A DNA stretch of 62,872 nucleotides, counting the filler, from Octopus bimaculoides (lineage: Eukaryota), in NCBI RefSeq assembly GCF_001194135.2. It is 4 parts of 3 records of this genome, joined end to end, with 100 filler letters (N's around TTAATTAATTAA, not from the genome) between each part and the next. Parts side by side here need not be neighbours in the genome. Positions count along the whole stretch, not along the records: positions 15,801 to 44,698 come from NC_068984.1; 3 more parts are not named here. One strand, given 5' to 3'. The translations under genes were made by a program, and so were the position numbers. Positions 18,254-18,725 of the stretch are shown here, piece by piece; the first letter of the stretch is position 1, and every line of letters starts with the position of its first letter. The notes under the pieces were generated by a model. The model was not told the origin of the DNA and did not search any database. It saw only the letters and a program-made list of their open reading frames with translations.

Positions 18254-18725
18254 TGGCAGCATTTGTCCTATTTTCCTGGACTGCCATGTTAGCTTGGCGA
18301 TAACTATTAATATCCAGTACCGCTGCCGTAGTCTCCTTTAGAGAGATTTAAAAATATTAATATTTCTATTTTTGAAAACCAGCGGATGTATTCCACTGAA
18401 TTTAGGTAAATAATCCTTCGAACAGACGGTCAGCAGCAATGCCTGCTGGGTTCGGCTGCTCTACATTGATAAGAGGCAAATACCCCGAAACTAGTCTGTA
18501 GATGCCAGACCAGCAAGGGGAAGTGGCTGACCTTCCCTGTTCGAAGGTTATAATGGACACAGGTTTGTGTGTCACATAGCTAGCTGGAGGTGATGACCTC
18601 TTGGAGCTAACCAATGGCAGCATTCGTCCTATTTTCCTGGACTGCCATGTTAGCTTGGCGACAACAATTAATATCCAGTACCGCTGCTGTAGTCTCCTTT
18701 AGAGAGATTTAGAAATATTAATATT

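What the first reader, a model, noticed from the sequence alone, without database searches (positions are those of the whole stretch)
18449..18511. Intact-looking type I hammerhead ribozyme with Schistosoma Sm-alpha-like architecture
Seen: stem I UCUACA/UGUAGA (18460-18465 with 18497-18502), a UGC/U bulge, then GGC/GCC and GGUU/GACC. The core is UUGAUAA...GAAA, stem II is GAGG/CCCC (one A.C mismatch), loop II is CAAAUA, stem III is palindromic ACUAGU, and the GUC cleavage site follows 18496. Established: loop II CAAAUA plus a bulged 6-bp stem I is the tertiary-contact arrangement of the Sm-alpha hammerhead. Tiny palindromic stem III motifs are typical of metazoan minimal hammerheads that cleave as dimers. 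Inference: this is a genomic self-cleaving RNA in a cephalopod-like genome that protein annotation would miss. It lies on the strand opposite the ShKT gene, so it should not cut that pre-mRNA.
Basis: partly seen in the sequence, partly recalled or inferred. Interest (0 to 1): 0.92.

Follow-up and report, generated by a model that had tools for sequence, protein, structure and literature searches.

The report
Octopus repeat-borne hammerhead ribozyme copy
The motif is a genuine type I hammerhead ribozyme sequence, but it sits in a partial, single-ribozyme copy of an octopus mobile repeat of an already known kind (a retrozyme-like element), so it is an ordinary find with one mildly unusual core base pair.

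Summary
A descriptor finds one hit in the piece and none in 1000 shuffles. A covariance model built from unrelated animal hammerheads ranks it first (31.1 bits, E about 1e-6).

The motif caps a 142-nt hairpin inside a 362-nt, 44% GC, non-coding unit present as 1.3 tandem copies and flanked by TA-rich microsatellites. This fits an animal non-LTR retrozyme (Penelope-dependent repeat).

Two relatives were recovered: one on an Octopus vulgaris chromosome (about 91% identical) and one in sequencing-run contigs (78%). All three copies carry U3-A8 instead of C3-G8, so this is a family trait, not decay. Helix I shows two compensatory pair changes. In the 78% copy no invariant core base has changed.

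Against "intact":
- Rfam's hammerhead models do not report it, even at E up to 10.
- Helix II has an A.C mismatch.
- The tertiary-contact bulge reads UGC, not the usual UAC.
- Helix III is too small for a monomer.
- The locus holds only one ribozyme, so there is no partner in cis and no unit-length RNA can be released.

Verdict: a new member of a known kind, probably a relic. Cleavage is untested.

The parts
18254..18615 (+). Full 362-nt repeat unit (44% GC, no Pfam-recognisable ORF) that contains the hammerhead
   Evidence: blastn of the unit against the piece, alignment of the repeated ends, composition and circular fold, Pfam negative for its 98-aa ORF
18616..18730 (+). Partial second unit, a repeat of unit positions 1-116 at 94.8% identity. 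It ends before the position where a second hammerhead would lie
18410..18551 (+). Long imperfect hairpin that prolongs helix I, with the hammerhead at its tip
   Evidence: -57.5 kcal/mol, z = -3.5, none of 200 shuffles folds as well
18449..18511 (+).
18457..18459 (+). 5' side of the helix I internal loop, UGC, opposite U18503. It is homologous to the canonical UAC tertiary-contact bulge
   Evidence: UAC is found in 20 of 24 unique canonical hammerheads. Family copies read UGC or UUC
18460..18465 (+). Helix I, 5' strand, UCUACA
   Evidence: Two of its six pairs show compensatory changes in relatives
18466..18472 (+). Core box UUGAUAA (U3 at 18466, A8 at 18471) in place of the canonical CUGAUGA
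   Evidence: U3 and A8 are present in all three family copies
18473..18486 (+). Helix II GAGG/CCCC with the A18474.C18485 mismatch, and loop II CAAAUA (18477-18482)
   Evidence: The mismatch is shared by the Logan copy and is a G-C pair in the O. vulgaris copy
18487..18489 (+). Core G12 A13 A14
   Evidence: Identical in the 78% copy. One A of the GAAA run is missing in the O. vulgaris copy
18490..18495 (+). Helix III: the palindrome ACUAGU (A15.1-U16.1 and C15.2-G16.2 around a 2-nt loop)
   Evidence: Forming A15.1-U16.1 alone as a monomer raises the energy from -13.4 to -7.8 kcal/mol
18496..18497 (+). C17 and the predicted cleavage site (between 18496 and 18497)
   Evidence: Position relative to the core and the covariance-model alignment
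18497..18502 (+). Helix I, 3' strand, UGUAGA
18073..18251 (.). TA-rich microsatellite flanking the element on the left
18728..18784 (.). (TA)n microsatellite flanking the element on the right

Best explanation
The motif is a true type I hammerhead carried by an octopus repeat family that behaves like an animal non-LTR retrozyme, that is, a non-autonomous repeat thought to depend on Penelope-like elements.

Shown here:
- The hammerhead caps a long hairpin inside a 362-nt, AT-rich, non-coding unit.
- The unit is present as 1.3 head-to-tail copies between TA microsatellites.
- Related copies exist elsewhere in octopus DNA. They run across the unit junction, which fits tandem or circular templates.
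- The whole family uses a U3-A8 core pair instead of C3-G8.

Inferred from the published life cycle of such elements:
- In multimeric transcripts, neighbouring hammerheads pair their palindromic helix III segments into a double hammerhead.
- Each cuts after C17, releasing unit-length RNA with 5'-OH and 2',3'-cyclic phosphate ends.
- A host tRNA ligase circularises the RNA.
- A Penelope-type reverse transcriptase copies the circle or multimer back into the genome, giving insertions with non-integer copy numbers.

The copy in this window has a single hammerhead, a mismatched helix II, a non-consensus tertiary-contact bulge and no cis partner. It is most likely a dead-end insertion. At best it would nick its own transcript weakly, and it cannot release a unit-length or circular RNA.
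For: The motif is real:
- Descriptor: 1 hit versus 0 in 1000 shuffles.
- Independent covariance model: 31.1 bits, E about 1e-6, full length.
- Same helix lengths and loop II as the Rfam RF00163 consensus.

Repeat context:
- 18254-18367 recurs at 18616-18730 with a 362-nt period and 94-95% identity.
- The unit is 44% GC. Folded as a circle it gives -114.1 kcal/mol, z = -3.9.
- The hairpin 18410-18551 has z = -3.5.
- No Pfam domain in any long ORF of the piece.
- TA microsatellites lie on both sides. Penelope-like elements show insertion bias for microsatellites, including (TA)n (PMC8557442).

Family:
- A HMMER search with the antisense 98-aa ORF found an O. vulgaris 'hypothetical protein' and a Logan ORF.
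- Their DNA holds unit positions 194-362 plus 1-60 at 91-93% identity, and 189-361 plus 2-64 at 78%.
- All three copies have U3 and A8.
- Helix I has two compensatory pairs, A-U to G-C and U-A to C-G. Ninety percent of cells are paired, against at most 52% when partners are slid.
- Of 9 changes in the 47-nt hammerhead of the 78% copy, none hits the 12 invariant core positions (P about 0.05). Eight of the nine are compatible with the fold.

Literature:
- Canonical animal hammerheads have a 6-bp helix I, a 4-bp helix II, and a 1-2 bp helix III with a 2-4 nt palindromic loop. They act as dimers. A natural U3-A8 covariation is known (PMC4209133).
- Retrozyme units are about 170-400 nt, low in GC and tandem (PMC7229834).
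- Single-unit derivatives are common and thought unable to transpose (bioRxiv 10.64898/2026.07.22.740005).
Against: - Rfam's curated hammerhead models do not report this copy or the Logan copy, even at E up to 10 on 201 nt.
- Only 1.3 units and one hammerhead are present here. The two relatives are also partial, single-hammerhead copies. No array with two or more ribozymes has been seen for this family.
- The O. vulgaris copy lacks one A of the GAAA box.
- Only three family members were available, so covariation is not statistically secure: 59 of 500 shuffles reach the observed score.
- The other two copies are not in TA microsatellites.
- No Penelope reverse transcriptase or endonuclease ORF was found in the piece or in the O. 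vulgaris locus.
- There is no expression or cleavage data.
- The assembly is gap-rich and might have collapsed a longer array.
Confidence: 0.7

Rival explanations
1. One reading: this particular locus encodes an intact, active self-cleaving ribozyme that cuts its own transcript, possibly with a host function.
For: - All invariant core bases are present if U3-A8 is accepted as an isosteric replacement of C3-G8. That pair is conserved in the family, and a natural U3-A8 covariation is described in PMC4209133.
- The hammerhead-compatible fold lies only 1.3 kcal/mol above the minimum free energy.
- The A10.2.C11.2 mismatch is shared with a 78% relative, so it may be tolerated or even selected.
Against: - Helix III cannot close as a monomer: it has a 2-nt loop, and the 1-bp alternative costs 5.6 kcal/mol.
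- There is no second hammerhead in cis for the dimer mode.
- The bulge reads UGC instead of the conserved UAC.
- Helix II is weak.
- Rfam is silent.
- The repeated ends of the element have diverged by about 5%, which suggests an old, neutrally drifting insertion.
- There is no evidence of transcription.
Confidence: 0.1
2. The sequence is a fragment of an autonomous Penelope-like element (a pseudo-LTR or 3'-terminal piece left by 5' truncation), not a separate non-autonomous retrozyme.
For: - Penelope-like elements carry hammerheads in their terminal repeats, form partial tandems, often have an adjacent inverted truncated copy, and prefer microsatellite targets (PMC8557442, PMC4209133).
- The Logan copy has an inverted piece (unit 79-151) directly upstream of the hammerhead.
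- Both relatives start at the same point, just 5' of the hammerhead, and end near TTAATATCCAG.
- Retrozymes are reported to derive from Penelope terminal repeats (bioRxiv 10.64898/2026.07.22.740005).
Against: - No reverse transcriptase or GIY-YIG ORF, nor any Pfam domain, in the long ORFs of the 29-kb piece or of the O. vulgaris locus.
- Animal Penelope elements typically carry minimal hammerheads. Canonical ones, with a 6-bp helix I and a 4-bp helix II with loop CAAAUA, are the kind found in retrozymes (PMC4209133, PMC7229834).
- All three junctions of the 362-nt unit are seen without any intervening coding region.
Confidence: 0.15
3. The match is a chance resemblance inside a hairpin-forming repeat such as a foldback or miniature inverted-repeat element.
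For: - Rfam's hammerhead models give no hit.
- The 63-nt fold is not unusually stable on its own: z = -1.1.
Against: - 0 of 1000 shuffles give any descriptor hit.
- Covariance-model E about 1e-6.
- Loop II is identical to the canonical CAAAUA.
- The core is unchanged in a 78% relative, and helix I shows compensatory changes.
Confidence: 0.02

Closest known systems
Canonical animal type I hammerheads (Rfam RF00163: Schistosoma Sm-alpha, newt satellite 2, coral and mussel repeats)
   Same: - Open helix I of 6 bp, followed by a 3-nt/1-nt internal loop and a distal stem.
- 4-bp helix II closed by CAAAUA.
- GAAA box, short palindromic helix III, GUC cleavage triplet.
   Different: - U3-A8 instead of C3-G8.
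- Bulge UGC instead of UAC.
- A.C mismatch at 10.2-11.2.
- Helix III palindrome of 6 nt rather than 8 nt.
- Scores below every reporting threshold of the Rfam model, whereas coral examples score 35-56 bits.
Animal non-LTR retrozymes (Cervera and de la Pena 2020, PMC7229834; Li et al. 2026, bioRxiv 10.64898/2026.07.22.740005)
   Same: - Non-coding unit of a few hundred nt (362) with low GC (44%).
- Head-to-tail repetition.
- A type I hammerhead in the unit and a stable rod-like or branched fold.
- Dispersed partial copies.
   Different: - Only 1.3 units and one hammerhead at this locus.
- No multimeric array of the family seen yet.
- No RNA evidence.
- Cephalopod examples were not found in the searchable literature.
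Minimal hammerheads of Schistosoma mansoni Penelope-like elements with a U3-A8 core (Cercyon-related, PMC4209133)
   Same: A natural covariation of the core pair to U3-A8 in a retroelement-borne animal hammerhead.
   Different: Those are minimal motifs, described in PMC4209133 as lacking helix III and loop 3. Here the U3-A8 pair sits in a canonical-architecture hammerhead with loop II CAAAUA and a bulged helix I.
Amphibian retrozyme hammerheads (HHR_Amex1 of axolotl, newt satellite 2)
   Same: A very weak helix III that can be drawn as one base pair capped by a palindromic tetraloop, which implies weak activity as a monomer and efficient cleavage as a dimer (PMC7229834).
   Different: The amphibian motifs keep all conserved loop 1-loop 2 contacts (PMC7229834), occur in large arrays, and have been shown to cleave. 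None of this is shown here.

Membership tests
Hammerhead ribozyme, type I | Three helices around a junction, with helix I open and helices II and III closed | tested here: met
   Pairings read directly from the sequence. Full-length alignment to a type I covariance model, positions 1-49 of 49.
Hammerhead ribozyme, type I | Invariant core U4 G5 A6, A9, G12 A13 A14, the A15.1-U16.1 pair, and H17 not G | tested here: met
   UUGAUAA at 18466-18472, GAA at 18487-18489, A18490 with U18495, and C18496.
Hammerhead ribozyme, type I | C3 and G8 (the Watson-Crick pair in the active core) | tested here: not met
   The bases are U3 and A8. A Watson-Crick pair is kept, and it is conserved in all three family copies. 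A natural U3-A8 covariation is reported in PMC4209133. That the double change retains activity rests on my own recollection of Przybilski and Hammann 2007, which I could not read here.
Hammerhead ribozyme, type I | G10.1-C11.1 pair and a stable helix II | tested here: inconclusive
   G10.1-C11.1 is present, but 10.2-11.2 is an A.C mismatch. The hammerhead-compatible fold is -13.4 kcal/mol against a minimum free energy of -14.7, and -20.3 if 10.2 is G.
Hammerhead ribozyme, type I | Reaches the Rfam RF00163 gathering score (34 bits) | tested here: not met
   No hammerhead match at gathering score, at E up to 10 on 201 nt, or at E up to 5 on the piece.
Hammerhead ribozyme, type I | Conserved tertiary-contact nucleotides: loop II CAAAUA and helix I bulge UAC | tested here: inconclusive
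   Loop II is CAAAUA. The bulge is UGC, against UAC in 20 of 24 unique canonical examples. Relatives have UGC or UUC, and one has loop II CAAUUA.
Hammerhead ribozyme, type I | Site-specific self-cleavage after position 17 | not testable with these tools
   Requires in vitro transcription or mapping of RNA ends.
Animal non-LTR retrozyme | Short non-coding unit (about 170-400 nt, low GC) carrying a type I hammerhead | tested here: met
   The unit is 362 nt and 44% GC. Its only ORF of note has no Pfam match.
Animal non-LTR retrozyme | Head-to-tail tandem repetition with a hammerhead in each unit, so that unit-length RNA can be excised | tested here: not met
   There are 1.3 units and a single hammerhead at this locus. 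The relatives are also partial, with 0.63-0.65 unit. This is consistent with a 'monomer derivative' of a retrozyme, but an active array has not been seen.
Animal non-LTR retrozyme | Multiple dispersed copies in the genome and in related genomes | tested here: met
   Copies lie on O. vulgaris chromosome OX597823.1 and in Logan contigs from five runs, with different flanks. Only two relatives could be retrieved.
Animal non-LTR retrozyme | Expressed as linear and circular unit-length RNA | not testable with these tools
   No RNA data are accessible. The nature of the Logan runs (RNA or DNA) could not be established.
Autonomous Penelope-like element | ORF with a reverse transcriptase and a GIY-YIG endonuclease between the terminal repeats | tested here: not met
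   The ten longest complex ORFs of the piece and six of the O. vulgaris locus have no Pfam match.

The most novel reading that the evidence does not exclude
The family is a live retrozyme spread across octopods. Its canonical-architecture hammerhead has fixed a U3-A8 core pair and keeps an A10.2.C11.2 mismatch. It still cleaves, as a double hammerhead in tandem arrays located elsewhere in the genome, and produces circular RNAs of about 362 nt in octopus tissues. A more speculative rider is not counted in the probability: in cephalopods, which edit RNA heavily, A-to-I editing of A10.2 would create an I-C pair and complete helix II, making cleavage dependent on editing.
Probability: 0.2. Interest if true: 0.45.

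Novelty: new member of a known kind. Interest (0 to 1): 0.3.

Why it matters
- It adds a cephalopod family to the known set of repeat-borne animal hammerheads.
- It shows that the U3-A8 core covariation can be fixed in a canonical hammerhead with the tertiary-contact architecture. Before this it was reported only for minimal Penelope motifs.
- The curated Rfam models miss the whole family, so genome-wide counts of hammerheads in octopus are probably underestimates.
- If the family is active, it would be a source of ribozyme-made circular RNAs in an animal group noted for unusual RNA biology.
- The locus in the window is most likely a neutral relic without consequence for its host.

Tried and rejected
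- **Rfam.** Gathering and permissive E-value searches on the site, the whole piece and a relative gave no hammerhead hit. The many 'miRNA' hits lie on microsatellites and were disregarded.
- **First ORF search.** A word-indexed protein search with the 73-aa antisense ORF found nothing. An exact look-up of that ORF also found nothing.
- **Full HMMER search.** This succeeded, but two of its four hits (P0002, a 4001-aa bacterial-type repeat protein, and P0004) are compositional artefacts and were discarded.
- **Profile search.** A profile of three ORFs recovered only P0003. Cluster look-ups gave no extra members.
- **Metagenome pattern scan.** It returned 98 loci of canonical hammerheads (the largest group shares one sample prefix, Ga0126343) but none of this family. 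They were used only as a yardstick and as training data.
- **Viral-contig and prokaryotic-genome scans.** These gave chance matches or nothing.
- **Literature.** No paper on cephalopod hammerheads or retrozymes was found. The Logan run accessions appear in no paper. The two papers on C3-G8 exchanges are not held.
- **ShKT gene.** No ShKT-like cysteine pattern is encoded in the piece.
- **Nearby coding genes.** No Pfam domain in long ORFs near the element or near the O. vulgaris copy.
- **Post-insertion decay.** I considered that U3, A8 and A10.2 were decay of a canonical CUGAUGA/GGGG master. I rejected this for U3-A8, which is present in all three copies, and for the A.C mismatch, which is shared with the 78% copy.

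Full report
**Observation**

On the + strand the sequence reads as follows:

GGUUCGGCUGC UCUACA UUGAUAA GAGG CAAAUA CCCC GAA ACUAGU C UGUAGA UGCCAGACC (18449-18511)

- A hammerhead descriptor I wrote allows C3-G8 or U3-A8, one helix II mismatch, a short helix III and at least 5 bp in helix I. It finds exactly this site on both strands of the 26 kb of non-N sequence. It finds nothing in 1000 dinucleotide-preserving shuffles.
- The exact 25-nt half-core and loop pattern occurs once, with none expected.

**Comparison with curated models**

- Rfam finds only a tRNA in the piece at gathering thresholds.
- It finds no hammerhead at E up to 10 on 201 nt around the site, or at E up to 5 on the whole piece.
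- To see what the curated model looks like, I scanned metagenome contigs for TGAYRAGNNNCAAATANNNCGAAAC. This returned 98 loci, mostly canonical animal type I hammerheads. The largest group comes from one sample series (contig prefix Ga0126343).
- Rfam RF00163 scores those at 35-56 bits. Its consensus is aUccagCUGAcGAGUCCCAAAUAGGACGAAACGcgCGUCcuggAu.
- That consensus has the same architecture as the candidate: a 6-bp helix I, a 4-bp helix II closed by CAAAUA, and a short palindromic helix III.
- Among 24 unique canonical examples, the three bases 5' of helix I are UAC in 20. The core pair is C3/G8 in 23. Helix III is mostly ACAGCUGU.
- The candidate therefore departs from the consensus in five places: U3, A8, A10.2 (mismatched with C11.2), UGC for UAC, and a 6-nt instead of an 8-nt helix III palindrome.
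- A covariance model built from 14 of those unrelated hammerheads, run with filters off, ranks 18457-18503 first at 31.1 bits, E about 1e-6, aligned over the full length. The next hit scores 12.2 bits.
- Part of that score is by construction, because the training set was gathered with the candidate's loop and half-core. Helix I, helix III, C17 and the bulge position are independent of the pattern.

- The segment 18254-18367 recurs at 18616-18730 at 94-95% identity with a 362-nt period. The element is therefore 1.3 head-to-tail copies of a 362-nt unit.
- It lies between a TA-rich microsatellite (18073-18251) and (TA)n (18728-18784).
- The second partial unit stops before the hammerhead position. 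The locus, and the whole piece, thus has a single hammerhead.
- Helix I continues into a long imperfect hairpin, 18410-18551 (-57.5 kcal/mol, z = -3.5).
- The unit is 44% GC. Folded as a circle it is unusually stable (-114.1 kcal/mol, z = -3.9).
- None of the long ORFs of the piece has a Pfam match.
- These are the published traits of animal non-LTR retrozymes: tandem units of about 170-400 nt, low GC, and a type I hammerhead (PMC7229834).
- Such elements are thought to derive from, and depend on, Penelope-like elements (bioRxiv 10.64898/2026.07.22.740005). Those elements show an insertion bias for microsatellites, including (TA)n (PMC8557442).

**Relatives**

- DNA searches of animal genomes were not available, so I used the 98-aa antisense ORF that happens to span the hammerhead as bait.
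- A word-indexed protein search failed. A full HMMER search found two genuine relatives and two compositional artefacts.
- P0001 is an annotated 'hypothetical protein' of Octopus vulgaris. Its locus on chromosome OX597823.1 holds unit positions 194-362 followed by 1-60, at 91-93% identity.
- P0003 comes from near-identical 1.7-kb contigs assembled from five sequencing runs. These hold unit positions 189-361 plus 2-64 at 78% identity, with an inverted piece of the unit (79-151) just upstream.
- Both relatives cross the same unit junction as the window's copy but have different flanks. The 362-nt unit is therefore a real, dispersed family, and it is copied from tandem or circular templates.

**What the relatives say about the ribozyme**

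- All three copies have U3 and A8. This core pair is a family trait, not decay of this copy. A U3-A8 covariation is already known in Schistosoma Penelope hammerheads (PMC4209133).
- Helix I shows two compensatory double changes: A-U to G-C in O. vulgaris, and U-A to C-G in the 78% copy.
- Ninety percent of pair cells are standard pairs, against at most 52% when partners are slid.
- The 78% copy has 9 differences in the 47-nt hammerhead. None falls in the 12 invariant core positions (P about 0.05). Eight are compatible with the fold: loop changes, G-C to G.U, one compensatory pair, and C17 to U17.
- The A10.2.C11.2 mismatch is shared by the window and the 78% copy. It is a G-C pair in O. vulgaris.
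- The O. vulgaris copy has lost one A of the GAAA box and is probably dead.
- With only three sequences the shuffle control is weak: 59 of 500 shuffles reach the observed score.
- Rfam also fails on the 78% copy.

**Activity of this copy (inference)**

- The hammerhead-compatible fold is -13.4 kcal/mol, against a minimum free energy of -14.7 for the 63-mer.
- Closing helix III in a monomer costs a further 5.6 kcal/mol.
- Published work links such minimal palindromic helix III motifs to cleavage as dimers within multimeric transcripts (PMC4209133, PMC7229834). There is no second motif here.
- The non-consensus bulge and the helix II mismatch weaken the tertiary and secondary supports.
- The two repeated ends of the element differ by about 5%, which suggests an old insertion.
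- I therefore regard this locus as a relic that cannot release unit-length or circular RNA.
- The conservation pattern suggests that the family itself propagated through functional hammerheads.

**Rivals**

- An active ribozyme at this locus with a host function is possible but unsupported.
- A fragment of an autonomous Penelope-like element is hard to separate from a retrozyme. The inverted adjacent piece in the Logan copy and the common 5' boundary of the relatives fit Penelope habits. However, no reverse transcriptase or endonuclease ORF is nearby, and the hammerhead is of the canonical rather than the minimal kind.
- Chance is excluded.

**Other points**

No such cysteine pattern is encoded in the piece.
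- The organism is an octopus or a close relative. This rests on the 91% copy in O. vulgaris. I also recall the abundant tRNA-derived octopus SINE seen at 18819-18945, but that is memory, not a test.
- The assembly has many N gaps, so a longer tandem array may have been collapsed.

**Verdict**

The motif is a real hammerhead in a known kind of element. It is a new (cephalopod) family with a fixed U3-A8 core that curated models miss. It is probably inactive at this locus. Interest is modest.

Noticed in passing
L105 18392-18436 (- strand), Octopus vulgaris chromosome OX597823.1: A second, unrelated hammerhead-like motif with a canonical CUGAUGA...GAAA core lies 8 kb from the family copy. It has a 6-bp helix I (GUUUUG/CAAAGC) and a weak helix II. 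It scores 19.4 bits on my model and gets only a weak Rfam HH9 hit (13.8 bits, E = 1). This hints that hammerhead-bearing repeats are dense in octopus DNA.
   Followed up: partly
L106-L110 (Logan contigs from SRR11869384, SRR11869385, SRR11869390, SRR11869391 and SRR11869394), e.g. L106 1573-1645: An inverted piece of the repeat unit (positions 79-151) lies directly upstream of the hammerhead-bearing part. This arrangement recalls the inverted truncated copies described next to Penelope-like elements. The species and the type of run (RNA or DNA) could not be established.
   Followed up: partly
window 34979-35051 (+): A tRNA-Arg(CCG) gene or tRNA-like SINE head: Rfam 57.5 bits, also called by ARAGORN.
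   Followed up: no
window 18819-18945, 35144-35270, 44508-44634, and related pieces near 35189-35291, 35914-36015 and 41488-41590: Several copies, in both orientations and at 76-82% identity, of a short interspersed repeat. From memory it resembles the abundant tRNA-derived octopus SINE. One copy lies about 90 nt downstream of the retrozyme-like element.
   Followed up: no
window 36281-36552 with 42007-42278; 34385-34665 with 40751-41031; 16359-16544 with 36170-36355: Three pairs of long inverted repeats at 93-96% complementarity, 5-20 kb apart. They look like young dispersed repeats or the ends of a large rearranged element.
   Followed up: no
window 33364-33654: A very regular tandem array: a 32-nt unit, 9 copies, 98% matches.
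   Followed up: no
window 37900-40000: A dense block of trinucleotide repeats (ATC/TCA, then TGG/GAT/GAG on the same strand), including a 104-nt unit repeated 2.4 times. It gives long low-complexity ORFs on both strands. Short N gaps lie inside it.
   Followed up: no
Octopus vulgaris protein CAI9729092.1 (P0001), L105 10001-10534: This annotated 'hypothetical protein' is an ORF read antisense through the retrozyme-like repeat and its hammerhead. It is almost certainly a gene-prediction artefact.
   Followed up: yes
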